This document shows positions 9,703 through 64,000 of a stretch of 64,000 nt of DNA, one piece after another (within the stretch, counting starts at the first letter, position 1; the number at the start of each line of letters is the position of its first letter). The DNA lies in the NCBI RefSeq assembly GCF_947568905.1, contig NC_079165.1, positions 30,504,001 through 30,568,000 on the forward strand, in the 5' to 3' direction. The stretch comes from Ostrea edulis. Taxonomy: Eukaryota. The notes beneath the pieces were generated by a model. That model was not told where the DNA came from. It saw nothing but the letters and a program-made list of their open reading frames with translations, and ran no database searches. Both the position numbers and the translations under genes were made by a program.

Positions 9703-9972
9703 TCAATGTTCTCTAGACTTTCCTCGAAGTTCCACCATCTCTTTACCATTTTCATCTTCTACGAACAATTTGAGTATATTCCTGGCGAAGGGGAACTCTT
9801 GGACTTCGTTGTCCGCGTTTTTGTTCGCGTCGTTGACCGCCTCGGCTTTTGTGTTGAACCAGTCACCAGAAATTTCTTCTTTGCTTGCAAACCCTCCCGG
9901 TCCCGCCAGGAATTCTGCTCTCCAGCGGTATCGCGGGCACTCCACATCTTTATTCCCTGGTTCTGTTGACAT
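9703..9972 (-). CDS. Small uncharacterised protein (89 aa), single coding exon
   Basis: Clean ORF MSTEPGNKDVECPRYRWRAEFLAGPGGFASKEEISGDWFNTKAEAV... in a GC-richer island. ATG context gaaaATG just after a possible acceptor (tctgacag). Minus-strand AATAAA at 9341-9346. Confidence 0.6.
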   Translation of the reverse strand: MSTEPGNKDVECPRYRWRAEFLAGPGGFASKEEISGDWFNTKAEAVNDANKNADNEVQEFPFARNILKLFVEDENGKEMVELRGKSREH

Positions 9973-43700: not shown

Positions 43701-44873
43701 AAACGTAGTCGATATATCTCAATGTCGAGTTCAAAGCCACCAGAAGATATTTTTTTTATCTCAAGTGAAAGCTTTTGAATAAATTCTGTCTCATAATAAT
43801 ACAAAAACAGACTACGTAATAAAGAAACACAATTTGTATCCAACAGACTATTGGAAGACCTGATCACCAAATACTACGTAGATAATGTCAAAGAGGAACT
43901 CCGGCATATTTTCACTATCAACATCAGAATAATTATGCGTAGTTCTTATCATAGTGGTATTTAACAAAGTAATTTGAACAAAGAATAGAACTGTCTGGTC
44001 GATTAGAGAATACGTTTATAATTTCAGTTTGAATTTGAAAATCCACTTACTTTATTTATTAAAATTCATTTTAAATTGTCTGCATTCTGTATAACGTTTA
44101 TTTATTAAAAATCATTTTAAATTGTCTGCATTCTGTATAACGTTTATTTATTCTAGCGACGGAAATGTTATTTAAGCAACACTGAGAAGATGGAATTCTT
44201 CTTTAAATGCTTTTAAAAATTTCATCATTTGCTTCGGTGGCCATCATATTTCTTTTTCAGCAACATTGTCTGGAAGGAGGGACCATTCATTATTATATGT
44301 AGTAAGACATACAAAAAGATGGTATCTACTAGAATCAAATAGAAAATATCACAATTCCAAAACGAATAGATGATTTTAACTATTCAAATAAATAATTGTT
44401 GGACATTTCCATTTGAAGTTGTTTTTATTTATCTAAATACTAGTAGGCTAGCAGGTCTACCAGTTTAAAATGTTATGTCTAGCATTGGAATTCAATAGGC
44501 TTGAAACATCACGAGTCGCAGACTAACTACGTGTAACGAGTACATTTTCTACCGCCGGTGCATTATTTATTTCAATTTAAAGCATATCCTATGAACAGAT
44601 TAAAGTCGCTGGAGCCACGAGGGAACATGAACTGTGATGGTGAAAGAAGGAGAATCATAAGGCAAGCGAGAGGATAGTTGAATGAAGGAATTTGGAAAAG
44701 GTATTTCATTGCTCGGCGCACAAGATCGTCTTCAAGCGAAATACGAGATTTGTCTAGCCTGGCAGCTACAGAGACACCCTCCACACACACATGAATATAC
44801 CATATACCCCTTAGTTTGTCAAGTACAAGCCTGCATGCCAAAAAACTACATTCACCACGTATGTATTTTGAAA

Positions 44874-44879
44874 TTTATT
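44874..44879 (-). terminator. Polyadenylation signal of the vWA gene (repeated in every unit)
   Basis: AATAAA on the minus strand ~140 nt past the stop codon. Confidence 0.55.
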
Positions 44880-45018
44880 ACAGAATCAAAATATATTGTA
44901 ACAATATGAGGTAATGAAATAACAATATGAGGTCATCCAAATGATTCACATACAGATGTGAGCATACAAAACCTAATTATTATAGCTGCTGTTTATGTCT
45001 TCACGGTAGACGCCACTG

Positions 45019-46750
45019 TTAAACCATCTCCATATCCCTGTGAGATTCTCTAACATTTCTTACACGTCTCCATGCATAGTCATATCGTAAAAGAGACTTC
45101 TTTATCGTGTTCTTGTTACAGTCTGTTACCAAACATCTGCGCACAAACACGTAATATCCTAAGGATACCATTTTGTTCACTTGAGATCGAACGTCCGAAT
45201 CGGATAAAAGACGGGATTCCCAACACCTTGTTTTGGTAAATCCCGAAGACATTTTACAGTACGCAACAAAACGTTTGGAATCACCAGTTTTCCTCACCGA
45301 GAACTCGTACACAGCTGCGGGGAATGTCTTTCCTCCACAGATGGTAGATTTTCGGAAACCCCTTCTTCCTCTGTATCTTTCTACCCATTCAGCGTCATCT
45401 TCCGGTCTACTGGGAGCAATGGCGAGTTCCCATGGTGACCATTGTATCCTGCTCATAGAGAAATTCGTCTCTGGGACAATTTCCCTCTTCAATTTTCTTA
45501 GCGTATCAATCTGCAAAAGAAATATTCCAGTCATATAGAATTGCAACATTTTGATATATTGGAATCTAAATTACAGTATTGTGAAATAGGATTATCATTA
45601 GATGTCAAATGTTAATATTACTTCCAACTTCATAACGTTATTCTTCTTGATATCTAGAAAACATTACTTAAACTTTAATACCTTCTGACACGAAATGGCC
45701 AGAGATTTCGCTTTCTTTCTATCCACAGCAGAGCGAGGAGACCTTTTGGCGATTGTTTTCTTGACCCCGTGAATGATTGAAGTCTTTTTCTTCAGATTTA
45801 CAATGGAAGGAACTTTTGTCAAGGATGACACCTTTTTCAGGACCGGCTTGTAGGGAAGTGTTTTGGACTTTGGCGAATCTGCCACTTTAGTGGATGAAGA
45901 CGTACAAGGTTCTCCGTCTTTGAGTGCGCCAAACATCGCATTCAAGTCTTTATGAAGACCCATTCTAGCGTTTCTTTGTCGTACTTCTTGTTCATAGATG
46001 TCCAGAAATTCGGCTCCCTGTTCTCTGTAGCAGATGGCCATTATGAAGTCAAACAGGTTGGAGAACTGGTCTAGTTCTACTCGTCTGCCTGCTGTCTTGT
46101 CGGCTAGTGTTTGGTAGAAGTCATGGGTCCTTTTGTCACCCGAAGCTCTACATTGCACTCCATACACTCGGATACCCTACAATTTTACAATTGATATAAT
46201 CTATGATATTTGCAAAGAGATAAAGTAACATTGTCGTGGAGTTTAACAATCAAATATTGGAAGGTAGGACGATTTTTAGTCATCATGTAACATGTAATTT
46301 ACTCACCATCACTGCCAATTTTTCGACTTCCTGCTTCCAGTCCAGCTTCAATTTATTGTCTGGGTAATTCACATCATGTGGGTGGGCATCACCTATCATC
46401 ACAAGCGCCCTTTGAGTTCCGGGCGTCCAAGTCAGACTTTGAACCTCGTGCAAAACCAGTTCATAGCACTCATCCGAGTCGCCACCCCCCGTGGAGCCCA
46501 CGTTTTTCACCCACTGACACAGTTCCTTCAAGTCTGTAGAAAAGTCTATGTACTTGGTGACATAAGAAGAATTCCGGTCACAGTAGTCTCCGTGAGCGAA
46601 CACAGCGATTCTGATACCGGGTATATCCGTTTGAAGTCTTTGAATCATTTCTTGGACATTCTGTTTAACAGCATTGATGGAACTGGACATAGATCCAGTC
46701 GTATCAAACGAGAAACAAATCTCGATCGGACCGCCTGGTGGGGATGCCAT
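45019..46750 (-). CDS. vWA + basic linker + GIY-YIG/ET-like domain protein, copy 1 (476 aa)
   Basis: Exons 46750-46307, 46176-45682, 45510-45019, all phase 0 with GT-AG introns. vWA motifs FSFDTTGSMS, AHGDYCD, GGGDSDECYE, VMIGDAHPH. C-terminal AVYEFSV...FVAYCK...YDYAWRRVRN. Confidence 0.88.
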
Positions 46751-46837
46751 ATGTTAAATATTGTGGTCTGTATTGAGTTGTTTCAGAGTTACTTCGTGCG
46801 TCTCTGCTTGTATTGCTGTTTCTCGGTTAGAAATGAT

Positions 46838-46846
46838 CTTTATATA
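46838..46846 (-). promoter_or_regulatory. TATA box of the vWA gene (repeated in every unit)
   Basis: TATATAAAG on the minus strand ~90 nt upstream of the ATG. Confidence 0.6.
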
Positions 46847-47477
46847 CTATCGGTGCGATAGACTTGCAATTGAGTTGGAGACTTGCTCTTTAAGGTAGAC
46901 TGAGAATCTCCCTGTTCGAAATAGACTGACGATCCTATACGTATACAAAGACTGACAATTTCAACAATATAGAACTTTTATATAATATATTTCATCAAAA
47001 TTAAACGGATTCATGGAATCGACTAGTTGCGTAGCTATATTATTTCTATTAATATTTCTTTAAAAAATGGGTTTCAATAATAATGCTGGTTATGAAATAT
47101 TTCTTTAAAAAATGGGTTTTAATGCAAACATTTGCAAATCTCCAAACCGAGCACTTGAACAACAAGAAATTTACTACCGGTAATAGCCAATTGCTATATT
47201 TAACAAAGTATCAATACTGCATCGGTATGGTGTATTATAGATATGATATTATATAGCGTTAAAAGTTTCTATCATGAATTTTCTGAAGGTGGTCTAAAAT
47301 TCCAAGATTGCAAATGTGTTGTATTTAACGATATGTTTTCTTTAGAAATCGATCGCAATTTTGTTTCTATTTTAATCGGGTCTGGCGGATAACAATATTC
47401 CTTACACTTGTACAAACATTTCAATATTCTTCAGTTTGGAATTATCATTCACATTCTGCAATTACTCTTAATATGTA

Positions 47478-48150
47478 GCAGGGGACAGTTTCGCACTATA
47501 GGCCCGGTCAACTTTTTGAAAAAATGGAAATACCCCATATTTGAAGTGATATTACATGTGGAAAAATGTGTAGAATAATTTTAGGATACATGTCAAATGA
47601 AGCCGAGTGCTTATTAAAAATGTTGATATACAACATGTACATGTAGGTGTCACCATGATTCCTAGCATATAGATAGGTGCAAATACGAAACTAAGACACA
47701 TGGTCAGTTGCTGAAGAAATTCCGGTGAAAACATGCATGGTCCAACAAAAGATCTGTAGCTGAGAGGGAAGGTGGATGGCCCCATATGAAAGGTAGATTT
47801 TTAAGAAGGGCGGACAGGGTTCTTGATTGTGCACAGTGTCTAAATCTCCACGTTTGGTACTGTGCTGGTGGGGTGGGGGGTGGGGGGGAGCAGGTTGCGG
47901 ATTAGCCCAAATGAGAGAAAAGCAAAGCAAAAAAGGGGCACCTGCTCAGAGCATGCTTTGTGCACCCGCACCAGTATATATAAATCACATGTAATTTAGG
48001 GTCATAATTTATTAACTACACCAATATGAAATACAAGTATTGACATAAAAGGGAAATAGGATTTTTTTTATTAGTCTGTCATAATGTGACTTTGATGTAT
48101 ACCCCCTACCCCTACCCACATGTTTCAGAACCAAAGAAACTGTCCCCTGC
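47478..48150. mobile_element. TIR MITE in the array spacer (present in all four units)
   Basis: 15-bp TIRs gcaggggacagtttc / gaaactgtcccctgc. Contains a G-rich tract. Confidence 0.7.
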
Positions 48151-49089
48151 CACCATAGATACAACTAGATATCACTAGATGGGTATATATCAATGATGGG
48201 TACATAATAAAACTATATATCACTAGTGATCAAGGAGTGGCGGGGTGGGAACCAGACTTAAAAATTAACCGTTCTCGAGCTTTCGTAAACACCTTTTCCG
48301 TCGTATCAAAATGATGATATGGTAAATGTTGTGGAAGTTTAATACGAAAAAGGCACATTCAAAAAAGAATATAATAAAGTATTTTTTTACTCTCTACTTG
48401 AGGTACCTAAAATGAAATATTTTAAATGTAAATATTTTTAAAGTAAATAGTTTACTATTTTTCATTGAAGTGCCTATATAAATATTATATTTGAATAATC
48501 CTAATATCGATGTAAAAGTGCAATGGAATGAAGAACGGTTTTGGAATTTAGTGATATCAGAATAACAAAAATGAACTTTTTCGTTTAAAATGTACAACCA
48601 ACCAAACGGGCAAGGATGTTGCAACCCCCATTACCCCATTTAACCCCCCCCCCCCCTTGCATCAGCTGTTCAATTTAAACAGATATCCCTTTTTGAATAG
48701 TGATATAACTTTTTCCGAGTATGTTATATCATTCATTCTTCTAGGTGAGAATACCGATTCAATTTGATATCTCCGTGACTAGAAATAAAATATCACAGAT
48801 CCTAGTTCGCAATACAAGCTATTTACATTGATTTGGTAATGAATGAATTTGAATAGCAGGTATGATCACTTACTCGAATGAGTGATATCACCATTCAAAT
48901 AGGTGATATCACCAATTCAATAGGAATGATTTGGAATAGGTAATATCATTTATTCGAACTCTATTTCATAACGATATGTTGTTCTCAGAGTTGTTGCTCA
49001 TTATTTCGTTCATGAAAACGATTCAACTTGACGATGAAAATGGGGAAAAAACGAACGGTCATCAAATTCATAAATGCTATAAAGAATAC

Positions 49090-49372
49090 AACATTACGAT
49101 TGGGGCAATAAGCCGGACCCCTGGACATACCAGAGGTGAAATCATGAGCTTAAAAGCAGTCAATATTCCCTGTTGATCGGTCACACTCGCACGAGCCCCA
49201 TATTTCGATTAGGTAAACGTAGTAATCCGTAGTCGCAGTCAGTGTGTACGGAACGGACTAACAATTGGTATGAAACACGTCAGACAGCATTGGACCTAAC
49301 GACAGGCTATATTTGCAAATTAGATCAATTTGACAACCATAGAATTTGCGAAATGCAAATAGGTCATCTCAC
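49090..49372 (-). mobile_element. Penelope-like remnant next to the unit junction (also in units 2 and 3)
   Basis: Reverse complement resembles 22200-22460 (cgcaaattctatgg, tctgacgtgtttcata, tttacct, ctctggtat.tccaggggtcc). Confidence 0.7.
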
Positions 49373-50032
49373 TGATTCAAAATGAATACGAGATATTGCC
49401 TACTCAAATAAATAATTCTTGGACATTTCCATTTGAAGTTGTTTTTATTTATATAAATACTAGTAGGCTAGCAGGTATACCAGTGTTAGGTGTTAAGTTT
49501 AGCATATCGCATCATCTTGGAATTCACATCACGAGTCGGTGGCTTACTAACGAGTACATTTTCTACCACCGGTGCATTATTTATTTCAATTTAAAGCATA
49601 TCTTATGAACAGATTAAAGTCGCTGGAGCCACGAGGGAACATGAACTGTGAGGGTGAAAGAAGGAGAATCATAAGGCAAGCGAGAGGATAGTTGAATGAA
49701 GGAATTTGGAAAAGGCATTTCATTGCTCGGTGCACAGGATCGTCTTCAAGCGAAATACGAGATTTGTCTAGCCTGGTAGCTACAGAGACACCCTCCACAC
49801 ACACATGAATATACCACATACACCTTAGTTTGTCAAGTACAAGCCTGCATGACATAAAACTACATTCACCACGTATGTATTTTGAAATTTATTACAGAAT
49901 CAAAATATATTGTAACAATATGAGGTAATGAAATAACAATATGAGGTCATCCAAATGATTCACATACAGATGTGAGCATACAAAACCTAATTATTATAGC
50001 TGCTGTTTATGTCTTCACGGTAGACGCCACTG

Positions 50033-51764
50033 TTAAACCATCTCCATATCCCTGTGAGATTCTCTAACATTTCTTACACGTCTCCATGCATAGTCATATC
50101 GTAAAAGAGACTTCTTTATCGTGTTCTTGTTACAGTCTGTTACCAAACATCTGCGCACAAACACGTAATATCCTAAGGATACCATTTTGTTCACTTGAGA
50201 TCGAACGTCCGAATCGGATAAAAGACGGGATTCCCAACACCTTGTTTTGGTAAATCCCGAAGACATTTTACAGTACGCAACAAAACGTTTGGAATCACCA
50301 GTTTTCCTCACCGAGAACTCGTACACAGCTGCGGGGAATGTCTTTCCTCCACAGATGGTAGATTTTCGGAAACCCCTTCTTCCTCTGTATCTTTCTACCC
50401 ATTCAGCATCATCTTCCGGTCTACTGGGAGCAATGGCGAGTTCCCATGGTGACCATTGTATCTTGCTCATAGAGAAATTCGTCTCTGGGACAATTTCCCT
50501 CTTCAATTTTCTTAGCGTATCAATCTGCAAAAGAAATATTCCAGTCATATAGAATTGCAACATTTTGATATATTGGAATCTAAATTACAGTATTGTGAAA
50601 TAGGATTATCATTAGATGTCAAATGTTAATTTTACTTCCAACTTCATAACGTTATTCTTCTTAATATATAGAAAACATTACTTAAACTTTAATACCTTCT
50701 GACACGAAATGGCCAGAGATTTCGCTTTCTTTCTATCCACAGCAGAGCGAGGAGACCTTTTGGCGATTGTTTTCTTGACCCCGTGAATGATTGAAGTCTT
50801 TTTCTTCAGATTTACAATGGAAGGAACTTTTGTCAAGGATGACACCTTTTTCAGGACCGGCTTGTAGGGAAGTGTTTTGGACTTTGGCGAATCTGCCACT
50901 TTAGTGGATGAAGACGTACAAGGTTCTCCGTCTTTGAGTGCGCCAAACATCGCATTCAAGTCTTTATGAAGACCCATTCTAGCGTTTCTTTGTCGTACTT
51001 CTTGTTCATAGATGTCCAGAAATTCGGCTCCCTGTTCTCTGTAGCAGATGGCCATTATGAAGTCAAACAGGTTGGAGAACTGGTCTAGTTCTACTCGTCT
51101 GCCTGCTGTCTTGTCGGCTAGTGTTTGGTAGAAGTCATGGGTCCTTTTGTCACCCGAAGCTCTACATTGCACTCCATACACTCGGATACCCTACAATTTT
51201 ACAATTGATATAATCTATGATATTTGCAAAGAGATAAAGTAACATTGTCGTGGAGTTTAACAATCAAATATTGGAAGGTAGGACGATTTTTAGTCATCAT
51301 GTAACATGTAATTTACTCACCATCACTGCCAATTTTTCGACTTCCTGCTTCCAGTCCAGCTTCAATTTATTGTCTGGGTAATTCACATCATGTGGGTGGG
51401 CATCACCTATCATCACAAGCGCCCTTTGAGTTCCGGGCGTCCAAGTCAGACTTTGAACCTCGTGCAAAACCAGTTCATAGCACTCATCCGAGTCGCCACC
51501 CCCCGTGGAGCCCACGTTTTTCACCCACTGACACAGTTCCTTCAAGTCTGTAGAAAAGTCTATGTACTTGGTGACATAAGAAGAATTCCGGTCACAGTAG
51601 TCTCCGTGAGCGAACACAGCGATTCTGATACCGGGTATATCCGTTTGAAGTCTTTGAATCATTTCTTGGACATTCTGTTTAACAGCATTGATGGAACTGG
51701 ACATAGATCCAGTCGTATCAAACGAGAAACAAATCTCGATCGGACCGCCTGGTGGGGATGCCAT
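50033..51764 (-). CDS. vWA + GIY-YIG/ET-like domain protein, copy 2
   Basis: Exons 51764-51321, 51190-50696, 50524-50033. Differs from copy 1 by one R>K change in the ORF translations. Confidence 0.88.
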
Positions 51765-54700
51765 ATGTTAAATATTGTGGTCTGTATTGAGTTGTTTCAG
51801 AGTTACTTCGTGCGTCTCTGCTTGTATTGCTGTTTCTCGGTTAGAAATGATCTTTATATACTATCGGTGCGATAGACTTGCAATTGAGTTGGAGACTTGC
51901 TCTTTAAGGTAGACTGAGAATCTCCCTGTTCGAAATAGACTGACGATCCTATACGTATACAAAGACTGACAATTTCAACAATATAGAACTTTTATATAAT
52001 ATATTTCATCAAAATTAAACGGATTCATGGAATCGACTAGTTGCGTAGCTATATTATTTCTATTAATATTTCTTTAAAAAATGGGTTTCAATAATAATGC
52101 TGGTTATGAAATATTTCTTTAAAAAATGGGTTTTAATGCAAACATTTGCAAATCTCCAAACCGAGCACTTGAACAACAAGAAATTTACTACCGGTAATAG
52201 CCAATTGCTATATTTAACAAAGTATCAATACTGCATCGGTATGGTGTATTATAGATATGATATTATATAGCGTTAAAAGTTTCTATCATGAATTTTCTGA
52301 AGGTGGTCTAAAATTCCAAGATTGCAAATGTGTTGTATTTAACGATATGTTTTCTTTAGAAATCGATCGCAATTTTGTTTCTATTTTAATCGGGTCTGGC
52401 GGATAACAATATTCCTTACACTTGTACAAACATTTCAATATTCTTCAGTTTGGAATTATCATTCACATTCTGCAATTACTCTTAATATGTAGCAGGGGAC
52501 AGTTTCGCACTATAGGCCCGGTCAACTTTTTGAAAAAATGGAAATACCCCATATTTGAAGTGATATTACATGTGGAAAAATGTGTAGAATAATTTTAGGA
52601 TACATGTCAAATGAAGCCGAGTGCTTATTAAAAATGTTGATATACAACATGTACATGTAGGTGTCACCATGATTCCTAGCATATAGATAGGTGCAAATAC
52701 GAAACTAAGACACATGGTCAGTTGCTGAAGAAATTCCGGTGAAAACATGCATGGTCCAACAAAAGATCTGTAGCTGAGAGGGAAGGTGGATGGCCCCATA
52801 TGAAAGGTAGATTTTTAAGAAGGGCGGACAGGGTTCTTGATTGTGCACAGTGTCTAAATCTCCACGTTTGGTACTGTGCTGGTGGGGTGGGGGGTGGGGG
52901 GGAGCAGGTTGCGGATTAGCCCAAATGAGAGAAAAGCAAAGCAAAAAAGGGGCACCTGCTCAGAGCATGCTTTGTGCACCCGCACCAGTATATATAAATC
53001 ACATGTAATTTAGGGTCATAATTTATTAACTACACCAATATGAAATACAAGTATTGACATAAAAGGGAAATAGGATTTTTTTTATTAGTCTGTCATAATG
53101 TGACTTTGATGTATACCCCCTACCCCTACCCACATGTTTCAGAACCAAAGAAACTGTCCCCTGCCACCATAGATACAACTAGATATCACTAGATGGGTAT
53201 ATATCAATGATGGGTACATAATAAAACTATATATCACTAGTGATCAAGGAGTGGCGGGGTGGGAACCAGACTTAAAAATTAACCGTTCTCGAGCTTTCGT
53301 AAACACCTTTTCCGTCGTATCAAAATGATGATATGGTAAATGTTGTGGAAGTTTAATACGAAAAAGGCACATTCAAAAAAGAATATAATAAAGTATTTTT
53401 TTACTCTCTACTTGAGGTACCTAAAATGAAATATTTTAAATGTAAATATTTTTAAAGTAAATAGTTTACTATTTTTCATTGAAGTGCCTATATAAATATT
53501 ATATTTGAATAATCCTAATATCGATGTAAAAGTGCAATGGAATGAAGAACGGTTTTGGAATTTAGTGATATCAGAATAACAAAAATGAACTTTTTCGTTT
53601 AAAATGTACAACCAACCAAACGGGCAAGGATGTTGCAACCCCCATTACCCCATTTAACCCCCCCCCCCTTGCATCAGCTGTTCAATTTAAACAGATATCC
53701 CTTTTTGAATAGTGATATAACTTTTTCCGAGTATGTTATATCATTCATTCTTCTAGGTGAGAATACCGATTCAATTTGATATCTCCGTGACTAGAAATAA
53801 AATATCACAGATCCTAGTTCGCAATACAAGCTATTTACATTGATTTGGTAATGAATGAATTTGAATAGCAGGTATGATCACTTACTCGAATGAGTGATAT
53901 CACCATTCAAATAGGTGATATCACCAATTCAATAGGAATGATTTGGAATAGGTAATATCATTTATTCGAACTCTATTTCATAACGATATGTTGTTCTCAG
54001 AGTTGTTGCTCATTATTTCGTTCATGAAAACGATTCAACTTGACGATGAAAATGGGGAAAAAACGAACGGTCATCAAATTCATAAATGCTATAAAGAATA
54101 CAACATTACGATTGGGGCAATAAGCCGGACCCCTGGACATACCAGAGGTGAAATCATGAGCTTAAAAGCAGTCAATATTCCCTGTTGATCGGTCACACTC
54201 GCACGAGCCCCATATTTCGATTAGGTAAACGTAGTAATCCGTAGTCGCAGTCAGTGTGTACGGAACGGACTAACAATTGGTATGAAACACGTCAGACAGC
54301 ATTGGACCTAACGACAGGCTATATTTGCAAATTAGATCAATTTGACAACCATAGAATTTGCGAAATGCAAATAGGTCATCTCACTGATTCAAAATGAATA
54401 CGAGATATTGCCTACTCAAATAAATAATTCTTGGACATTTCCATTTGAAGTTGTTTTTATTTATATAAATACTAGTAGGCTAGCAGGTATACCAGTGTTA
54501 GGTGTTAAGTTTAGCATATCGCATCATCTTGGAATTCACATCACGAGTCGGTGGCTTACTAACGAGTACATTTTCTACCACCGGTGCATTATTTATTTCA
54601 ATTTAAAGCATATCTTATGAACAGATTAAAGTCGCTGGAGCCACGAGGGAACATGAACTGTGAGGGTGAAAGAAGGAGAATCATAAGGCAAGCGAGAGGA

Positions 54701-55044
54701 TAGTTGAATGAAGGAATTTGGAAAAGGCATTTCATTGCTCGGTGCACAGGATCGTCTTCAAGCGAAATACGAGATTTGTCTAGCCTGGTAGCTACAGAGA
54801 CACCCTCCACACACACATGAATATACCACATACACCTTAGTTTGTCAAGTACAAGCCTGCATGACATAAAACTACATTCACCACGTATGTATTTTGAAAT
54901 TTATTACAGAATCAAAATATATTGTAACAATATGAGGTAATGAAATAACAATATGAGGTCATCCAAATGATTCACATACAGATGTGAGCATACAAAACCT
55001 AATTATTATAGCTGCTGTTTATGTCTTCACGGTAGACGCCACTG

Positions 55045-56776
55045 TTAAACCATCTCCATATCCCTGTGAGATTCTCTAACATTTCTTACACGTCTCCATG
55101 CATAGTCATATCGTAAAAGAGACTTCTTTATCGTGTTCTTGTTACAGTCTGTTACCAAACATCTGCGCACAAACACGTAATATCCTAAGGATACCATTTT
55201 GTTCACTTGAGATCGAACGTCCGAATCGGATAAAAGACGGGATTCCCAACACCTTGTTTTGGTAAATCCCGAAGACATTTTACAGTACGCAACAAAACGT
55301 TTGGAATCACCAGTTTTCCTCACCGAGAACTCGTACACAGCTGCGGGGAATGTCTTTCCTCCACAGATGGTAGATTTTCGGAAACCCCTTCTTCCTCTGT
55401 ATCTTTCTACCCATTCAGCATCATCTTCCGGTCTACTGGGAGCAATGGCGAGTTCCCATGGTGACCATTGTATCTTGCTCATAGAGAAATTCGTCTCTGG
55501 GACAATTTCCCTCTTCAATTTTCTTAGCGTATCAATCTGCAAAAGAAATATTCCAGTCATATAGAATTGCAACATTTTGATATATTGGAATCTAAATTAC
55601 AGTATTGTGAAATAGGATTATCATTAGATGTCAAATGTTAATTTTACTTCCAACTTCATAACGTTATTCTTCTTAATATATAGAAAACATTACTTAAACT
55701 TTAATACCTTCTGACACGAAATGGCCAGAGATTTCGCTTTCTTTCTATCCACAGCAGAGCGAGGAGACCTTTTGGCGATTGTTTTCTTGACCCCGTGAAT
55801 GATTGAAGTCTTTTTCTTCAGATTTACAATGGAAGGAACTTTTGTCAAGGATGACACCTTTTTCAGGACCGGCTTGTAGGGAAGTGTTTTGGACTTTGGC
55901 GAATCTGCCACTTTAGTGGATGAAGACGTACAAGGTTCTCCGTCTTTGAGTGCGCCAAACATCGCATTCAAGTCTTTATGAAGACCCATTCTAGCGTTTC
56001 TTTGTCGTACTTCTTGTTCATAGATGTCCAGAAATTCGGCTCCCTGTTCTCTGTAGCAGATGGCCATTATGAAGTCAAACAGGTTGGAGAACTGGTCTAG
56101 TTCTACTCGTCTGCCTGCTGTCTTGTCGGCTAGTGTTTGGTAGAAGTCATGGGTCCTTTTGTCACCCGAAGCTCTACATTGCACTCCATACACTCGGATA
56201 CCCTACAATTTTACAATTGATATAATCTATGATATTTGCAAAGAGATAAAGTAACATTGTCGTGGAGTTTAACAATCAAATATTGGAAGGTAGGACGATT
56301 TTTAGTCATCATGTAACATGTAATTTACTCACCATCACTGCCAATTTTTCGACTTCCTGCTTCCAGTCCAGCTTCAATTTATTGTCTGGGTAATTCACAT
56401 CATGTGGGTGGGCATCACCTATCATCACAAGCGCCCTTTGAGTTCCGGGCGTCCAAGTCAGACTTTGAACCTCGTGCAAAACCAGTTCATAGCACTCATC
56501 CGAGTCGCCACCCCCCGTGGAGCCCACGTTTTTCACCCACTGACACAGTTCCTTCAAGTCTGTAGAAAAGTCTATGTACTTGGTGACATAAGAAGAATTC
56601 CGGTCACAGTAGTCTCCGTGAGCGAACACAGCGATTCTGATACCGGGTATATCCGTTTGAAGTCTTTGAATCATTTCTTGGACATTCTGTTTAACAGCAT
56701 TGATGGAACTGGACATAGATCCAGTCGTATCAAACGAGAAACAAATCTCGATCGGACCGCCTGGTGGGGATGCCAT
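55045..56776 (-). CDS. vWA + GIY-YIG/ET-like domain protein, copy 3
   Basis: Exons 56776-56333, 56202-55708, 55536-55045. Translation identical to copy 2. Confidence 0.88.
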
Positions 56777-59700
56777 ATGTTAAATATTGTGGTCTGTATT
56801 GAGTTGTTTCAGAGTTACTTCGTGCGTCTCTGCTTGTATTGCTGTTTCTCGGTTAGAAATGATCTTTATATACTATCGGTGCGATAGACTTGCAATTGAG
56901 TTGGAGACTTGCTCCTTAAGGTAGACTGAGAATCTCCCTGTTCGAAATAGACTGACGATCCTATACGTATACAAAGACTGACAATTTCAACAATATAGAA
57001 CTTTTATATAATATATTTCATCAAAATTAAACGGATTCATGGAATCGACTAGTTGCGTAGCTATATTATTTCTATTAATATTTCTTTAAAAAATGGGTTT
57101 CAATAATAATGCTGGTTATGAAATATTTCTTTAAAAAATGGGTTTTAATGCAAACATTTGCAAATCTCCAAACCGAGCACTTGAACAACAAGAAATTTAC
57201 TACCGGTAATAGCCAATTGCTATATTTAACAAAGTATCAATACTGCATCGGTATGGTGTATTATAGATATGATATTATATAGCGTTAAAAGTTTCTATCA
57301 TGAATTTTCTGAAGGTGGTCTAAAATTCCAAGATTGCAAATGTGTTGTATTTAACGATATGTTTTCTTTAGAAATCGATCGCAATTTTGTTTCTATTTTA
57401 ATCGGGTCTGGCGGATAACAATATTCCTTACACTTGTACAAACATTTCAATATTCTTCAGTTTGGAATTATCATTCACATTCTGCAATTACTCTTAATAT
57501 GTAGCAGGGGACAGTTTCGCACTATAGGCCCGGTCAACTTTTTGAAAAAATGGAAATACCCCATATTTGAAGTGATATTACATGTGGAAAAATGTGTAGA
57601 ATAATTTTAGGATACATGTCAAATGAAGCCGAGTGCTTATTAAAAATGTTGATATACAACATGTACATGTAGGTGTCACCATGATTCCTAGCATATAGAT
57701 AGGTGCAAATACGAAACTAAGACACATGGTCAGTTGCTGAAGAAATTCCGGTGAAAACATGCATGGTCCAACAAAAGATCTGTAGCTGAGAGGGAAGGTG
57801 GATGGCCCCATATGAAAGGTAGATTTTTAAGAAGGGCGGACAGGGTTCTTGATTGTGCACAGTGTCTAAATCTCCACGTTTGGTACTGTGCTGGTGGGGT
57901 GGGGGGTGGGGGGGAGCAGGTTGCGGATTAGCCCAAATGAGAGAAAAGCAAAGCAAAAAAGGGGCACCTGCTCAGAGCATGCTTTGTGCACCCGCACCAG
58001 TATATATAAATCACATGTAATTTAGGGTCATAATTTATTAACTACACCAATATGAAATACAAGTATTGACATAAAAGGGAAATAGGATTTTTTTTATTAG
58101 TCTGTCATAATGTGACTTTGATGTATACCCCCTACCCCTACCCACATGTTTCAGAACCAAAGAAACTGTCCCCTGCCACCATAGATACAACTAGATATCA
58201 CTAGATGGGTATATATCAATGATGGGTACATAATAAAACTATATATCACTAGTGATCAAGGAGTGGCGGGGTGGGAACCAGACTTAAAAATTAACCGTTC
58301 TCGAGCTTTCGTAAACACCTTTTCCGTCGTATCAAAATGATGATATGGTAAATGTTGTGGAAGTTTAATACGAAAAAGGCACATTCAAAAAAGAATATAA
58401 TAAAGTATTTTTTTACTCTCTACTTGAGGTACCTAAAATGAAATATTTTAAATGTAAATATTTTTAAAGTAAATAGTTTACTATTTTTCATTGAAGTGCC
58501 TATATAAATATTATATTTGAATAATCCTAATATCGATGTAAAAGTGCAATGGAATGAAGAACGGTTTTGGAATTTAGTGATATCAGAATAACAAAAATGA
58601 ACTTTTTCGTTTAAAATGTACAACCAACCAAACGGGCAAGGATGTTGCAACCCCCATTACCCCATTTAACCCCCCCCCCTTGCATCAGCTGTTCAATTTA
58701 AACAGATATCCCTTTTTGAATAGTGATATAACTTTTTCCGAGTATGTTATATCATTCATTCTTCTAGGTGAGAATACCGATTCAATTTGATATCTCCGTG
58801 ACTAGAAATAAAATATCACAGATCCTAGTTCGCAATACAAGCTATTTACATTGATTTGGTAATGAATGAATTTGAATAGCAGGTATGATCACTTACTCGA
58901 ATGAGTGATATCACCATTCAAATAGGTGATATCACCAATTCAATAGGAATGATTTGGAATAGGTAATATCATTTATTCGAACTCTATTTCATAACGATAT
59001 GTTGTTCTCAGAGTTGTTGCTCATTATTTCGTTCATGAAAACGATTCAACTTGACGATGAAAATGGGGAAAAAACGAACGGTCATCAAATTCATAAATGC
59101 TATAAAGAATACAACATTACGATTGGGGCAATAAGCCGGACCCCTGGACATACCAGAGGTGAAATCATGAGCTTAAAAGCAGTCAATATTCCCTGTTGAT
59201 CGGTCACACTCGCACGAGCCCCATATTTCGATTAGGTAAACGTAGTAATCCGTAGTCGCAGTCAGTGTGTACGGAACGGACTAACAATTGGTATGAAACA
59301 CGTCAGACAGCATTGGACCTAACGACAGGCTATATTTGCAAATTAGATCAATTTGACAACCATAGAATTTGCGAAATGCAAATAGGTCATCTCACTGATT
59401 CAAAATGAATACGAGATATTGCCTACTCAAATAAATAATTCTTGGACATTTCCATTTGAAGTTGTTTTTATTTATATAAATACTAGTAGGCTAGCAGGTA
59501 TACCAGTGTTAGGTGTTAAGTTTAGCATATCGCATCATCTTGGAATTCACATCACGAGTCGGTGGCTTACTAACGAGTACATTTTCTACCACCGGTGCAT
59601 TATTTATTTCAATTTAAAGCATATCTTATGAACAGATTAAAGTCGCTGGAGCCACGAGGGAACATGAACTGTGAGGGTGAAAGAAGGAGAATCATAAGGC

Positions 59701-60055
59701 AAGCGAGAGGATAGTTGAATGAAGGAATTTGGAAAAGGCATTTCATTGCTCGGTGCACAGGATCGTCTTCAAGCGAAATACGAGATTTGTCTAGCCTGGT
59801 AGCTACAGAGACACCCTCCACACACACATGAATATACCACATACACCTTAGTTTGTCAAGTACAAGCCTGCATGACATAAAACTACATTCACCACGTATG
59901 TATTTTGAAATTTATTACAGAATCAAAATATATTGTAACAATATGAGGTAATGAAATAACAATATGAGGTCATCCAAATGATTCACATACAGATGTGAGC
60001 ATACAAAACCTAATTATTATAGCTGCTGTTTATGTCTTCACGGTAGACGCCACTG

Positions 60056-61787
60056 TTAAACCATCTCCATATCCCTGTGAGATTCTCTAACATTTCTTAC
60101 ACGTCTCCATGCATAGTCATATCGTAAAAGAGACTTCTTTATCGTGTTCTTGTTACAGTCTGTTACCAAACATCTGCGCACAAACACGTAATATCCTAAG
60201 GATACCATTTTGTTCACTTGAGATCGAACGTCCGAATCGGATAAAAGACGGGATTCCCAACACCTTGTTTTGGTAAATCCCGAAGACATTTTACAGTACG
60301 CAACAAAACGTTTGGAATCACCAGTTTTCCTCACCGAGAACTCGTACACAGCTGCGGGGAATGTCTTTCCTCCACAGATGGTAGATTTTCGGAAACCCCT
60401 TCTTCCTCTGTATCTTTCTACCCATTCAGCATCATCTTCCGGTCTACTGGGAGCAATGGCGAGTTCCCATGGTGACCATTGTATCTTGCTCATAGAGAAA
60501 TTCGTCTCTGGGACAATTTCCCTCTTCAATTTTCTTAGCGTATCAATCTGCAAAAGAAATATTCCAGTCATATAGAATTGCAACATTTTGATATATTGGA
60601 ATCTAAATTACAGTATTGTGAAATAGGATTATCATTAGATGTCAAATGTTAATTTTACTTCCAACTTCATAACGTTATTCTTCTTAATATATAGAAAACA
60701 TTACTTAAACTTTAATACCTTCTGACACGAAATGGCCAGAGATTTCGCTTTCTTTCTATCCACAGCAGAGCGAGGAGACCTTTTGGCGATTGTTTTCTTG
60801 ACCCCGTGAATGATTGAAGTCTTTTTCTTCAGATTTACAATGGAAGGAACTTTTGTCAAGGATGACACCTTTTTCAGGACCGGCTTGTAGGGAAGTGTTT
60901 TGGACTTTGGCGAATCTGCCACTTTAGTGGATGAAGACGTACAAGGTTCTCCGTCTTTGAGTGCGCCAAACATCGCATTCAAGTCTTTATGAAGACCCAT
61001 TCTAGCGTTTCTTTGTCGTACTTCTTGTTCATAGATGTCCAGAAATTCGGCTCCCTGTTCTCTGTAGCAGATGGCCATTATGAAGTCAAACAGGTTGGAG
61101 AACTGGTCTAGTTCTACTCGTCTGCCTGCTGTCTTGTCGGCTAGTGTTTGGTAGAAGTCATGGGTCCTTTTGTCACCCGAAGCTCTACATTGCACTCCAT
61201 ACACTCGGATACCCTACAATTTTACAATTGATATAATCTATGATATTTGCAAAGAGATAAAGTAACATTGTCGTGGAGTTTAACAATCAAATATTGGAAG
61301 GTAGGACGATTTTTAGTCATCATGTAACATGTAATTTACTCACCATCACTGCCAATTTTTCGACTTCCTGCTTCCAGTCCAGCTTCAATTTATTGTCTGG
61401 GTAATTCACATCATGTGGGTGGGCATCACCTATCATCACAAGCGCCCTTTGAGTTCCGGGCGTCCAAGTCAGACTTTGAACCTCGTGCAAAACCAGTTCA
61501 TAGCACTCATCCGAGTCGCCACCCCCCGTGGAGCCCACGTTTTTCACCCACTGACACAGTTCCTTCAAGTCTGTAGAAAAGTCTATGTACTTGGTGACAT
61601 AAGAAGAATTCCGGTCACAGTAGTCTCCGTGAGCGAACACAGCGATTCTGATACCGGGTATATCCGTTTGAAGTCTTTGAATCATTTCTTGGACATTCTG
61701 TTTAACAGCATTGATGGAACTGGACATAGATCCAGTCGTATCAAACGAGAAACAAATCTCGATCGGACCGCCTGGTGGGGATGCCAT
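60056..61787 (-). CDS. vWA + GIY-YIG/ET-like domain protein, copy 4
   Basis: Exons 61787-61344, 61213-60719, 60547-60056. Translation identical to copy 2. Confidence 0.88.
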
Positions 61788-64000
61788 ATGTTAAATATTG
61801 TGGTCTGTATTGAGTTGTTTCAGAGTTACTTCGTGCGTCTCTGCTTGTATTGCTGTTTCTCGGTTAGAAATGATCTTTATATACTATCGGTGCGATAGAC
61901 TTGCAATTGAGTTGGAGACTTGCTCTTTAAGGTAGACTGAGAATCTCCCTGTTCGAAATAGACTGACGATCCTATACGTATACAAAGACTGACAATTTCA
62001 ACAATATAGAACTTTTATATAATATATTTCATCAAAATTAAACGGATTCATGGAATCGACTAGTTGCGTAGCTATATTATTTCTATTAATATTTCTTTAA
62101 AAAATGGGTTTCAATAATAATGCTGGTTATGAAATATTTCTTTAAAAAATGGGTTTTAATGCAAACATTTGCAAATCTCCAAACCGAGCACTTGAACAAC
62201 AAGAAATTTACTACCGGTAATAGCCAATTGCTATATTTAACAAAGTATCAATACTGCATCGGTATGGTGTATTATAGATATGATATTATATAGCGTTAAA
62301 AGTTTCTATCATGAATTTTCTGAAGGTGGTCTAAAATTCCAAGATTGCAAATGTGTTGTATTTAACGATATGTTTTCTTTAGAAATCGATCGCAATTTTG
62401 TTTCTATTTTAATCGGGTCTGGCGGATAACAATATTCCTTACACTTGTACAAACATTTCAATATTCTTCAGTTTGGAATTATCATTCACATTCTGCAATT
62501 ACTCTTAATATGTAGCAGGGGACAGTTTCGCACTATAGGCCCGGTCAACTTTTTGAAAAAATGGAAATACCCCATATTTGAAGTGATATTACATGTGGAA
62601 AAATGTGTAGAATAATTTTAGGATACATGTCAAATGAAGCCGAGTGCTTATTAAAAATGTTGATATACAACATGTACATGTAGGTGTCACCATGATTCCT
62701 AGCATATAGATAGGTGCAAATACGAAACTAAGACACATGGTCAGTTGCTGAAGAAATTCCGGTGAAAACATGCATGGTCCAACAAAAGATCTGTAGCTGA
62801 GAGGGAAGGTGGATGGCCCCATATGAAAGGTAGATTTTTAAGAAGGGCGGACAGGGTTCTTGATTGTGCACAGTGTCTAAATCTCCACGTTTGGTACTGT
62901 GCTGGTGGGGTGGGGGGAGCAGGTTGCGGATTAGCCCAAATGAGAGAAAAGCAAAGCAAAAAAGGGGCACCTGCTCAGAGCATGCTTTGTGCACCCGCAC
63001 CAGTATATATAAATCACATGTAATTTAGGGTCATAATTTATTAACTACACCAATATGAAATACAAGTATTGACATAAAAGGGAAATAGGATTTTTTTTAT
63101 TAGTCTGTCATAATGTGACTTTGATGTATACCCCCTACCCCTACCCACATGTTTCAGAACCAAAGAAACTGTCCCCTGCCACCATAGATACAACTAGATA
63201 TCACTAGATGGGTATATATCAATGATGGGTACATAATAAAACTATATATCACTAGTGATCAAGGAGTGGCGGGGTGGGAACCAGACTTAAAAATTAACCG
63301 TTCTCGAGCTTTCGTAAACACCTTTTCCGTCGTATCAAAATGATGATATGGTAAATGTTGTGGAAGTTTAATACGAAAAAGGCACATTCAAAAAAGAATA
63401 TAATAAAGTATTTTTTTACTCTCTACTTGAGGTACCTAAAATGAAATATTTTAAATGTAAATATTTTTAAAGTAAATAGTTTACTATTTATCATTGAAGT
63501 GCCTATATAAATATTATATTTGAATAATCCTAATATCGATGTAAAAGTGCAATGGAATGAAGAACGGTTTTGGAATTTAGTGATATCAGAATAACAAAAA
63601 TGAACTTTTTCGTTTAAAATGTACAACCAACCAAACGGGCAAGGATGTTGCAACCCCCATTACCCCATTTAACCCCCCCCCCTTGCATCAGCTGTTCAAT
63701 TTAAACAGATATCCCTTTTTGAATAGTGATATAACTTTTTCCGAATATGTTATATCATTCATTCTTCTAGGTGAGAATACCGATTCAATTTGATATCTCC
63801 GTGACTAGAAATAAAATATCACAGATCCTAGTTCGCAATACAAGCTATTTACATTGATTTGGTAATGAATGAATTTGAATAGCAGGTATGATCACTTACT
63901 CGAATGAGTGATATCACCATTCAAATAGGTGATATCACCAATTCAATAGGAATGATTTGGAATAGGTAATATCATTTATTCGAACTCTATTTCATAACGA

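What the first reader, a model, noticed from the sequence alone, without database searches (positions are those of the whole stretch)
44383..64000. Homogenised 5-kb tandem gene array encoding an unusual vWA-nuclease-fold fusion protein
Seen: at least four head-to-tail ~5.01-kb units, each a complete transcription unit (TATA, three phase-0 exons, AATAAA) for a 476-aa protein. Units 2-4 differ only by a few spacer SNPs and homopolymer or G-tract lengths. The protein has no signal peptide and combines a vWA domain, a Lys/Ser-rich linker and a GIY-YIG-like domain. Established: arrays of this identity are typical of dosage-amplified genes (rDNA, histones, snRNA) and of selfish or recently amplified loci. 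Intracellular vWA domains also act as adaptors in conflict systems. Inference: a dosage-amplified, possibly germline/chromatin or defence-related gene family with an architecture I do not recognise as described. No transposase or replication gene lies in the unit, so unequal crossing-over or rolling-circle (eccDNA) amplification is implied.
Basis: partly seen in the sequence, partly recalled or inferred. Interest (0 to 1): 0.88.

Follow-up and report, generated by a model that had tools for sequence, protein, structure and literature searches.

The report
Oyster tandem array: vWA–GIY-YIG-fold gene
The flat oyster keeps six near-identical head-to-tail copies of a conserved but unstudied mollusc gene, whose protein joins a metal-dependent docking domain to a nuclease-fold domain otherwise known from "plant-specific" ET regulators.

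Summary
Window 44336-64000 is a head-to-tail array of ~5.01-kb units, 99.0-99.96% identical including spacers. Each unit carries a three-exon minus-strand gene for a 476-aa protein. The window is Ostrea edulis OX387705.1:30,504,001-30,568,000, and the products equal RefSeq "uncharacterized" proteins exactly. The array continues past the window to six genes. Two more copies lie at 20.43 Mb and one at 40.46 Mb.

[quoted passage not shown] That fold is nearest to plant EFFECTOR OF TRANSCRIPTION domains (Pfam PF19239) and to T4 endonuclease II. The canonical Arg, Glu and Asn catalytic positions are not conserved, so nuclease activity is uncertain.

The architecture is not unique. More than 700 proteins across molluscs, a brachiopod and nemerteans share it, all unstudied. 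Magallana, Saccostrea and Haliotis also hold it in homogeneous arrays. Copies cluster by genus, spacers do not align between genera, and dN/dS is about 0.08-0.15. This points to dosage-type amplification with homogenisation, not an arms race. The Magallana orthologue is spliced and polyadenylated. Function remains inferred. This scan had not noted the family on other DNA.

The parts
44336..64000 (.). Tandem array as seen in the window. It continues about 8 kb beyond the window end to a total of six genes, ~27.7 kb.
   Evidence: extension from L001/L006
44380..49399 (.). Unit 1, the edge unit: 99.0% identical to unit 2, with differences concentrated at 44380-45654
49400..54411 (.). Unit 2 (5012 bp, used as reference)
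54412..59422 (.). Unit 3 (5011 bp, 99.96% to unit 2)
59423..64000 (.). Unit 4 (99.76% to unit 2), truncated by the window end
45019..46750 (-). Gene copy 1 (= XP_056009702.1, LOC125681602). Exons 46750-46307, 46176-45682, 45510-45019 (stop included).
50033..51764 (-). Gene copy 2 (= P0251 / XP_048757176.2 group). Exons 51764-51321, 51190-50696, 50524-50033.
55045..56776 (-). Gene copy 3 (identical protein). Exons 56776-56333, 56202-55708, 55536-55045.
60056..61787 (-). Gene copy 4 (identical protein). Exons 61787-61344, 61213-60719, 60547-60056.
46018..46726 (-). Copy 1: coding for the vWA domain (aa 9-201, interrupted by intron 1 at 46306-46177). MIDAS residues D16, T18, S20, T87, D121.
   Evidence: Pfam VWA_4 E 1.2e-10; model and fold search; invariant columns
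45502..45912 (-). Copy 1: coding for the disordered Lys/Arg/Ser-rich linker (aa 237-316, interrupted by intron 2 at 45681-45511), with bipartite NLS-like patterns
   Evidence: pLDDT below 50 at 237-296 and 300-316; composition and patterns
45022..45492 (-). Copy 1: coding for the ET-type GIY-YIG-fold domain (aa 320-476), all within exon 3
46839..46953 (-). Copy 1 promoter: five AGTCT-core motifs (46953-46860) followed by TATATAAA (46846-46839, -96 from the ATG). The same layout occurs in units 2-4 (51853-51967, 56865-56979, 61876-61990).
44874..44879 (-). AATAAA signal 140 nt after the stop of copy 1 (also 49888-49893, 54900-54905, 59911-59916)
   Evidence: use of the equivalent site is shown in M. 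gigas transcripts
48644..48656 (+). Poly-C tract of variable length in the spacer (13, 11, 10 and 10 nt in units 1-4; also 53658-53668, 58670-58679, 63673-63682). This position is occupied by (GT)n at the ends and the internal junction of the 20.43 Mb cluster.

Best explanation
SHOWN. This is part of a six-gene, ~27.7-kb head-to-tail array on Ostrea edulis chromosome OX387705.1. NCBI already annotates the gene as an uncharacterized protein. The gene belongs to a Lophotrochozoa-wide family. Its product is intracellular: there is no signal peptide, and the first vWA strand starts at residue 9. The product has four parts: (i) a vWA domain with a complete MIDAS metal site (DxTxS...T...D), (ii) a short helical extension, (iii) an ~80-residue basic disordered linker with NLS-like patterns, and (iv) a GIY-YIG-fold domain of the ET (Pfam PF19239) type. 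At least three oyster genera and an abalone keep the gene in arrays. In each array the spacers are homogenised within the species but cannot be aligned between genera. The coding sequence is under strong purifying selection. The Magallana orthologue is transcribed, spliced as modelled and polyadenylated.

INFERRED MECHANISM. The arrays grow and are kept uniform by unequal crossing-over and gene conversion between the gene segments, and they are retained because high dosage of an unchanged protein is useful. The protein probably acts in the nucleus. The vWA/MIDAS face would dock onto an acidic residue of a protein partner, and the flexible basic linker would place the GIY-YIG-fold domain on nucleic acid. 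Three canonical catalytic positions (alpha1 Arg, post-beta3 Glu, C-terminal Asn) are not conserved, while another polar set is invariant (R322, E323, E382, R437, D457-Y458, R471). That domain therefore either nicks DNA through a rewired site, as reported for the related plant ET2 domain, or only binds nucleic acid. I weight these two options about equally.
For: Array and gene model. Identity to RefSeq proteins and genome position. Six copies plus a 2-copy and a 1-copy locus. Family size and taxa: 131 representative clusters for the C-domain; 717 full-length hits; molluscs, Lingula, Lineus. vWA and MIDAS. GIY-YIG fold: AF2 model pLDDT 92.8; ET3 and ET2 TM 0.60 and 0.53, probability 1.0; T4 EndoII Z 7.4, then Hpy188I, I-TevI and UvrC; plant PF19239 cluster TM 0.70 over 145 residues; PF19239 hit by 51 of 137 family members, best E 3.3e-8. 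ET2 domain nicking activity as reported in PMC6585611. Arrays in other species: M. gigas, 8 copies at a 4016-bp period, 99.95-100% identical; S. echinata, at least 9 copies at 3756 bp; H. cracherodii, ~5.9-kb units at 96.6-99.0%. Genus-specific clades with 100/100, 100/98 and 99/99 support. Only the CDS aligns between genera. dN/dS 0.07-0.15. Spliced, polyadenylated M. gigas mRNA in 8 SRA-run assemblies. The array begins and ends with the gene segment. Linker disorder and NLS-like patterns.
Against: This protein's own PF19239 score (17 bits) is below Pfam's cutoff of 21.4. The canonical GIY-YIG Arg, Glu and Asn are not conserved, and those residue correspondences rest on low-probability alignments plus secondary-structure order, not on a superposition. 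There is no expression evidence for O. edulis itself in the data I could reach. Copy number rests on one assembly per species. No shared flanking genes were found between the O. edulis and M. gigas loci within 10 kb, so an ancient array is not separated from independent amplification. The mussel copy examined is solitary. No partner, substrate or localisation is known. 'Dosage' is inferred only from copy number and purifying selection.
Confidence: 0.6

Rival explanations
1. Inducible genome-defence or antiviral effector. vWA senses or docks to a conflict-system partner, the GIY-YIG domain destroys foreign nucleic acid, and the array gives burst expression on infection.
For: The fold is shared with phage and restriction GIY-YIG nucleases and with chlorovirus proteins. 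Copy number is high in several molluscs. The family is lineage-restricted and the C-domain occurs in several architectures.
Against: Purifying selection is strong on both domains (omega 0.04 and 0.10) and paralogues within a species are nearly identical, so there is no diversification. The canonical catalytic residues are not conserved. No induction data were found.
Confidence: 0.15
2. The arrays are independent, recent amplifications in each lineage (birth and death), not an old array kept uniform by concerted evolution. The homogeneity simply reflects youth.
For: Unit lengths differ (5.0, 4.0, 3.76 and 5.9 kb) and spacers do not align between genera. No shared flanks within 10 kb. O. edulis also has older dispersed copies (dS 0.04 at 20.43 Mb; 86% DNA identity at 40.46 Mb).
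Against: Four of the five lineages examined have arrays, so repeated independent amplification of the same gene would itself need a cause. Edge units are more diverged than central ones, as expected under ongoing homogenisation.
Confidence: 0.3
3. Assembly artefact: a single or low-copy gene inflated (or a larger array collapsed) by the assembler.
For: Units 2-4 are almost identical. The S. echinata array abuts a contig end, which shows that such arrays trouble assemblers.
Against: Units carry distinct SNPs and indels, and the edge copies encode four different proteins. Both array ends join unique sequence. Independent assemblies of three other species show the same organisation.
Confidence: 0.05
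4. The unit is, or derives from, a mobile element (for example a rolling-circle element or an eccDNA-propagated cassette), and the GIY-YIG domain is a domesticated element nuclease.
For: Copies lie at three loci on one chromosome. The 20.43 Mb block is exactly 2.0 units long (chance about 0.5%). Penelope-like elements with GIY-YIG nucleases abound in invertebrates (PMC8557442, listed).
Against: The unit has no transposase, RT or Rep ORF. The (GT)n also lies at the internal junction of the 2-unit block, which fits microsatellite-mediated unequal exchange. The singleton carries only the gene with its introns. The domain matches PF19239, not the Penelope type. The host-gene-like promoter and purifying selection are conserved across genera.
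Confidence: 0.07

Closest known systems
Plant EFFECTOR OF TRANSCRIPTION proteins (Arabidopsis ET1/ET2/ET3; Pfam PF19239 GIY_YIG_domain)
   Same: The GIY-YIG-fold domain is the nearest named structural relative: ET3 TM 0.60, ET2 TM 0.53, plant PF19239 cluster TM 0.70 over 145 residues. 51 of 137 family members hit PF19239, mostly over its C-terminal third.
   Different: ET proteins pair the domain with C-terminal zinc-binding ET repeats and are described as plant-specific (PMC6585611). Here the domain is C-terminal, is fused to an N-terminal vWA, has no ET repeats, and occurs in animals. This protein's own PF19239 score is below the Pfam cutoff.
Canonical GIY-YIG nucleases (T4 endonuclease II/DenA, Hpy188I, I-TevI catalytic domain, UvrC N-terminal domain)
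   Same: Same fold. They fill the top four places of a Foldseek-independent PDB search, with EndoII at Z 7.4 over 111 of 134 residues. The GIY-strand Tyr is kept (Y381, 83% Tyr).
   Different: The alpha1 Arg, the metal-binding Glu after beta3 and the C-terminal Asn are not conserved (C409, N447/T448 and R461 in this protein). A different invariant set is present instead (R322, E323, E382, R437, Y458, R471). Sequence similarity is not significant.
Intracellular vWA/MIDAS adaptor proteins (Dictyostelium alpha-kinase vwkA, TFIIH p44; mimivirus R811 by annotation echo)
   Same: A cytosolic or nuclear vWA with an intact MIDAS, fused to an enzymatic or effector module. vwkA is the best Swiss-Prot structural hit (E 8.5e-11), and TFIIH subunit 2 is also listed. 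Some orthologues are auto-named 'R811-like'.
   Different: The fused module is a GIY-YIG fold, not a kinase, zinc finger or RING. vWA similarity is generic (integrin beta I-domains score equally well), so no specific partner can be inferred.
Concertedly evolving tandem protein-coding gene arrays (for example histone gene repeats; from general knowledge)
   Same: Head-to-tail units that each hold a promoter, gene and spacer; near-identity within a species including spacers; species-specific clustering of copies; purifying selection on the product.
   Different: Copy number is modest (6 to at least 9). One intron-containing gene per unit. The function is unknown. Orthology of the arrays between genera is not shown.

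Membership tests
vWA domain with MIDAS | Significant match to a vWA profile above the curated cutoff | tested here: met
   PF25106 VWA_4 at 41.7 bits (cutoff 27), E 1.2e-10; PF00092 at 26.2 bits (cutoff 23.8)
vWA domain with MIDAS | Rossmann-like vWA fold | tested here: met
   Model strands and helices at 9-201. Foldseek probability 1.0 to vwkA, integrin beta I-domains and TFIIH p44.
vWA domain with MIDAS | MIDAS residues DxSxS...T...D | tested here: met
   D16, T18, S20 and D121 are invariant and T87 is at least 90% conserved in 110 sequences (DxTxS variant)
GIY-YIG nuclease superfamily | GIY-YIG alpha/beta fold | tested here: met
   VIA-align: EndoII Z 7.4, Hpy188I 4.3, I-TevI 4.1, UvrC 4.1, plus PD-T4-3, AtGRXS16-N and Eco29kI. 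Atlas GIY-YIG clusters at TM about 0.5.
GIY-YIG nuclease superfamily | Tyr of the GIY strand | tested here: met
   Y381 in beta1: Tyr in 114 and Phe in 14 of 137 sequences
GIY-YIG nuclease superfamily | Tyr of the YIG strand | tested here: inconclusive
   Y397: Tyr 67, Phe 39. Position 394: Tyr 52, His 36, Phe 13. The Gly of the motif is absent.
GIY-YIG nuclease superfamily | Conserved Arg at the start of alpha1 | tested here: not met
   The position before W410 is Cys here and Asn, Ser or His in the family. R413 is Arg in only 43 of 137 (the alignment is weak).
GIY-YIG nuclease superfamily | Metal-binding Glu after beta3, and C-terminal Asn | tested here: not met
   No conserved acidic residue at 441-455 (N447 and T448 here). 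R461 follows W460 where EndoII has the Asn of PPWN. D457 (84%) is the only conserved acid in that stretch.
GIY-YIG nuclease superfamily | Nuclease or nicking activity | not testable with these tools
   Needs a biochemical assay
Pfam PF19239 (ET-type GIY-YIG domain) | Profile score above the gathering threshold | tested here: inconclusive
   This protein scores 17.0 bits against a cutoff of 21.4. 51 of 137 relatives match at E below 0.01, best 3.3e-8. Orthologues in Haliotis and Gigantopelta carry precomputed PF19239 labels.
Plant ET proteins | C-terminal Cys/His ET repeats | tested here: not met
   No such region exists: the domain ends the protein at residue 476
Concertedly evolving tandem gene family | Near-identical head-to-tail units including spacers, with copies clustering by species | tested here: met
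Concertedly evolving tandem gene family | Arrays orthologous between species (an old array, not repeated new ones) | tested here: inconclusive
Transposable element or rolling-circle element | Element-encoded transposase, Rep or RT, or dispersed insertions | tested here: not met
   Spacer ORFs have no Pfam match. Only three loci were found, all on one chromosome.

The most novel reading that the evidence does not exclude
The ET-type GIY-YIG domain is not plant-specific. In lophotrochozoans it would be the working end of a nuclear, MIDAS-guided DNA-nicking or DNA-marking protein. Dosage would be so critical that oysters and abalone have kept the gene as histone-like, concertedly evolving arrays with a conserved AGTCT-repeat promoter. 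That would be a previously unrecognised animal chromatin, repair or genome-defence factor.
Probability: 0.15. Interest if true: 0.7.

Novelty: new variant of a known kind. Interest (0 to 1): 0.5.

Why it matters
The finding puts an anatomy on a large mollusc, brachiopod and nemertean protein family that is annotated only as 'uncharacterized'. That anatomy is a MIDAS vWA, a basic linker and an ET-type GIY-YIG fold. It shows that the fold called plant-specific in the ET literature has animal relatives in a different architecture. It also documents a rare case of an intron-containing protein-coding gene kept in homogenised tandem arrays in several mollusc lineages. This offers a tractable system for studying concerted evolution and dosage. 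It also matters for copy-number-aware genotyping in farmed oysters. If the domain proves to be an active nickase, it would point to an unstudied DNA-processing pathway in lophotrochozoans.

Tried and rejected
- Rfam and tRNA scans of the window found nothing.
- phmmer of exon 1 and exon 3 against PDB sequences, and the A2 profile against PDB, gave no significant hit.
- The ESM-Atlas feature search with exon 3 gave only low scores (0.56).
- The search for homologous proteins with the C-domain profile returned only 16 close hits, because of the word index and length window. It did not reach plant ET or prokaryotic relatives.
- hhalign of the family profile against single T4 EndoII and I-TevI sequences gave probability below 1%. 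I used it only as a topological hint.
- The synteny test by ORF-to-DNA search of M. gigas flanks against all O. edulis flanks gave no hits.
- Literature searches for the LOC and UniProt identifiers, SRA runs, PF19239 and PF25106 gave nothing useful.
- Rejected: 'standalone' 160-200-aa versions of the C-domain as evidence of a separate architecture. Several are simply ORF calls on exon 3 of genomic contigs; for example P0257 and P0261 start inside intron 2.
- Rejected: eccDNA integration as the necessary reading of the 2.0-unit block, once (GT)n was also found at its internal junction.
- I could not obtain model coordinates, so no residue-level superposition on GIY-YIG active sites was possible.

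Full report
**1. Observation**

K-mer autocorrelation of the window peaks sharply at 5012, 5011, 5014 and 5003 bp, and repeat finding gives four in-register copies. BLAST of unit 2 against the window returns four abutting matches:
- 44380-49399 (99.03%)
- 49400-54411 (unit 2 itself)
- 54412-59422 (99.96%)
- 59423-64000 (99.76%, cut by the window end)

A decayed 85% tail takes the array edge to 44336. Column-by-column comparison shows that units 2-4 differ only by a few SNPs, one 8-nt G-tract indel and a poly-C length. Unit 1, the edge unit, has its differences piled up in its outer 1.3 kb. There are no N runs, no Rfam hits and no tRNAs.

**2. Gene model**

The same structure gives intact ORFs in all four units. 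Units 2-4 encode one protein and unit 1 differs by K334R. These products are residue-for-residue identical to RefSeq proteins of Ostrea edulis: XP_056009702.1 for unit 1, and XP_048757176.2, XP_056009703.1 and XP_056009704.1 for units 2-4.

From the locus coordinates, the window is OX387705.1:30,504,001-30,568,000 of assembly GCA_947568905.1. Each unit has TATATAAA at -96 and AATAAA 140 nt after the stop.

Oyster orthologues have the same two intron positions. For Magallana gigas, eight assemblies of separate SRA runs carry the uninterrupted 1437-nt ORF. These contigs align to the genomic unit in three blocks at exactly the predicted junctions, and several end about 20 nt after the AATAAA. So the orthologue is transcribed, spliced and polyadenylated as modelled. 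I found no transcript data for O. edulis itself.

**3. Whole-array anatomy**

Past the window's right edge lie two more copies (P0250 and P0254), then 10 kb with no further called gene. The array therefore has six genes.

I use unit coordinates that run in the gene's orientation along unit 2, with the ATG at 2648. In these coordinates the array runs from phase 2453, which is 195 bp upstream of the last gene's ATG and next to a (TA)n run. It ends at phase 44, which is window 44336. So the array begins and ends with the gene segment and has the form gene-spacer-...-gene, about 27.7 kb in all. That is the form expected if unequal crossing-over between gene segments expanded an initial gene-spacer-gene arrangement. 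Edge copies are the most diverged, as expected when homogenisation works best in the middle.

A second locus at 20.43 Mb holds exactly 2.0 units, 96-97% identical to the main units including spacers (dS 0.036-0.042). Its layout is (GT)21-unit-(GT)20-unit-(GT)19. The main array has a poly-G/poly-C tract at the corresponding spot. Because (GT)n also sits at the internal junction, microsatellite-mediated unequal exchange explains the block as well as reintegration of a circle does.

A third locus at 40.46 Mb holds a single intron-containing copy with 86% DNA identity. Its homology covers only phases 2458-4478, so its upstream boundary falls within 5 bp of the main array's.

**4. The protein**

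*N-terminal half.* Exon 1 matches Pfam VWA_4 (E 1.2e-10) and VWA above their cutoffs. A full-length AlphaFold model built on 110 homologues gives four regions:
- a vWA fold at 9-201
- helices at 203-233
- a disordered stretch at 237-316
- a compact C-terminal domain at 320-476

The vWA part matches Dictyostelium vwkA, VWA3B, integrin beta I-domains and TFIIH p44 at probability 1.0. D16, T18, S20 and D121 are invariant and T87 is nearly so. This is a complete DxTxS...T...D MIDAS.

*Linker.* It has 22 Lys/Arg and 20 Ser/Thr in 85 residues and contains bipartite NLS-like patterns. By inspection there is no N-terminal hydrophobic segment.

*C-terminal domain.* Modelled alone from 137 sequences it is very confident (pLDDT 92.8, pTM 0.88). 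Its best Swiss-Prot structural matches are Arabidopsis EFFECTOR OF TRANSCRIPTION 3 and 2 (TM 0.60 and 0.53, probability 1.0). In the ESM Atlas, the nearest cluster outside its own family is the plant PF19239 family (TM 0.70 over 145 residues), followed by prokaryotic and phage GIY-YIG clusters.

A PDB search that does not rely on Foldseek places T4 endonuclease II first (Z 7.4, 111 residues), then Hpy188I, I-TevI and UvrC's N-terminal domain. Three more GIY-YIG entries appear in the top 15. Chlorovirus-type proteins match in BFVD. At sequence level this protein scores 17 bits on PF19239 (cutoff 21.4), but 51 of 137 relatives hit that model, best E 3.3e-8. The fold assignment is therefore firm, and the subfamily is the ET type. 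This agrees with the scan's separate note s1-274720.

**5. Is it a nuclease?**

Mapping conservation onto the secondary structure gives the following:
- The GIY-strand Tyr is kept (Y381, 83%).
- The YIG-strand Tyr is only partly kept (Y397, 49% Tyr and 28% Phe).
- No Arg is conserved at the start of alpha1 (C409 here; R413 is Arg in 31%).
- No acidic residue is conserved between beta3 and the YDYAW motif (N447 and T448 here).
- The residue after W460 is Arg or Lys, not Asn.

Profile alignments to single T4 EndoII and I-TevI sequences are not significant (probability below 1%) but give these same correspondences.

A different polar set is invariant or nearly so: R322, E323, E382, R437, D457, Y458 and R471. 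The domain evolves under omega of about 0.10. The ET2 domain is reported to nick DNA and to substitute for UvrC's domain (PMC6585611, read). I could not retrieve ET sequences to test whether they share this residue set. Activity is therefore open. I put a rewired nickase and a non-catalytic nucleic-acid-binding module at roughly equal odds.

**6. The family**

A search of 1.84 billion representatives with exon 3 found 131 clusters, and nine of ten 460-520-aa hits also have the N-terminal vWA. A full-length profile found 717 proteins at E of 1e-5 or better. The top 120 come from bivalves, gastropods, a chiton, Lingula and Lineus. All are named 'uncharacterized' or 'VWFA domain-containing', apart from a few auto-named after mimivirus R811. 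Longer architectures and a Mercenaria protein with five or more tandem C-domains also exist, all in molluscs where a name is given. Some short 'standalone' hits are only ORF calls on exon 3. I found no paper on the family.

**7. Arrays elsewhere and mode of evolution**

- M. gigas has eight copies at a 4016-bp period, 99.95-100% identical, plus one outlier. An EF-hand gene flanks the array.
- Saccostrea echinata has at least nine copies at 3756 bp, starting at a contig end.
- Haliotis cracherodii has ~5.9-kb units at 96.6-99.0% identity.
- The Mytilus copy I examined is solitary within 10 kb.

Copies cluster by genus with full support, and within-species branches are about 0.002. Between genera only the coding region (with intron 1) aligns. 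dN/dS is 0.07-0.10 between genera: 0.04 for vWA, 0.10 for GIY-YIG and 0.33-0.37 for the linker. Between the O. edulis loci it is 0.15.

This is the signature of concerted evolution or recurrent amplification of a functionally constrained gene. It is not the signature of an arms-race gene. Synteny within 10 kb was not detectable, so an ancient array and repeated amplification are not separated.

Despite the unalignable spacers, all three oyster genera have 3-5 AGTCT-core motifs (roughly TCG-Y-M-AGTCT) just upstream of the TATA box. These account for most AGTCT occurrences in each unit.

**8. Verdict**

The array is real and homogenised, and the domain reading is correct. Three points need changing:
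- The architecture is a widespread, database-annotated but unstudied lophotrochozoan family.
- The array organisation is shared by several mollusc lineages.
- Sequence evolution argues for dosage of a conserved function rather than conflict.

The mechanism is inference: MIDAS docking plus an ET-type GIY-YIG module acting on nucleic acid in the nucleus. This scan had not noted the family on other DNA.

Noticed in passing
window 46860-46953 (also 51874-51967, 56886-56979, 61897-61990); L008 and L012 upstream of 10001: Five AGTCT-core motifs (about TCG-Y-M-AGTCT) sit directly upstream of the TATA box. The same 3-5-copy module lies upstream of the TATA in M. gigas and S. echinata, although the spacers do not align. 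This is probably a conserved cis-regulatory element for an unknown factor.
   Followed up: partly
L005 8081-18180 (OX387705.1, ~20.43 Mb): A second cluster of exactly 2.0 units (proteins P0205 and P0253), laid out as (GT)21-unit-(GT)20-unit-(GT)19. The main array has a poly-G/C tract at that position.
   Followed up: partly
L025 9854-11832 (OX387705.1, ~40.46 Mb): A solitary intron-containing paralogue (P0255, 20-21 aa differences, 86% DNA identity). Its upstream homology boundary lies within 5 bp of the main array's upstream edge. A HYR/Sushi/EGF gene lies downstream.
   Followed up: partly
L030 1-14461 (Haliotis cracherodii JAJLRC010000004.1): Abalone members of the family also form a head-to-tail array of ~5.9-kb units, 96.6-99.0% identical including spacers.
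   Followed up: partly
P0043 (Mercenaria mercenaria XP_053393955.1, 991 aa): A predicted protein with five or six tandem copies of the ET-type GIY-YIG-fold domain and no vWA. It could be a real repeat protein or a gene model fused across a tandem array.
   Followed up: no
BFVD hits M1I060, M1HHK8, M1H415, M1HWP8; Atlas rows 3-8: Chlorovirus-type and prokaryotic or phage proteins share the PF19239-like GIY-YIG fold (TM 0.5-0.57). The ET-type domain therefore has a patchy distribution across plants, giant viruses, prokaryotes and lophotrochozoans.
   Followed up: no
window 49050-49354 and 54062-54366 versus 22208-22513 (opposite strand): A ~305-bp segment of the array spacer is 74% identical to a sequence 22 kb upstream in the window. 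This is probably a dispersed repeat (SINE- or MITE-like) captured in the unit.
   Followed up: no
L006 ~9765-9810: A long (TA)n run sits exactly at the upstream edge of the six-gene array.
   Followed up: no
L017 1-103 (Logan SRR21047134 contig): The first 103 nt of one M. gigas transcript contig do not match the array unit. They may come from a variant copy's upstream region, a 5' exon elsewhere, or an assembly chimera.
   Followed up: partly
window 31426-32545, 18642-18956, 33519-33780, 21593-21951: Unrelated short-period satellites lie in the left part of the window: 35 bp x 32, 26 bp x 12, 53 bp x 4.9 (100% identical), and 21/43 bp x 17.
   Followed up: no
window, at and below ~41948, minus strand: The gene next to the array on its left encodes a Dynein_attach_N / RPAP3_C protein (called gene in L003). 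It does not flank the M. gigas array.
   Followed up: no
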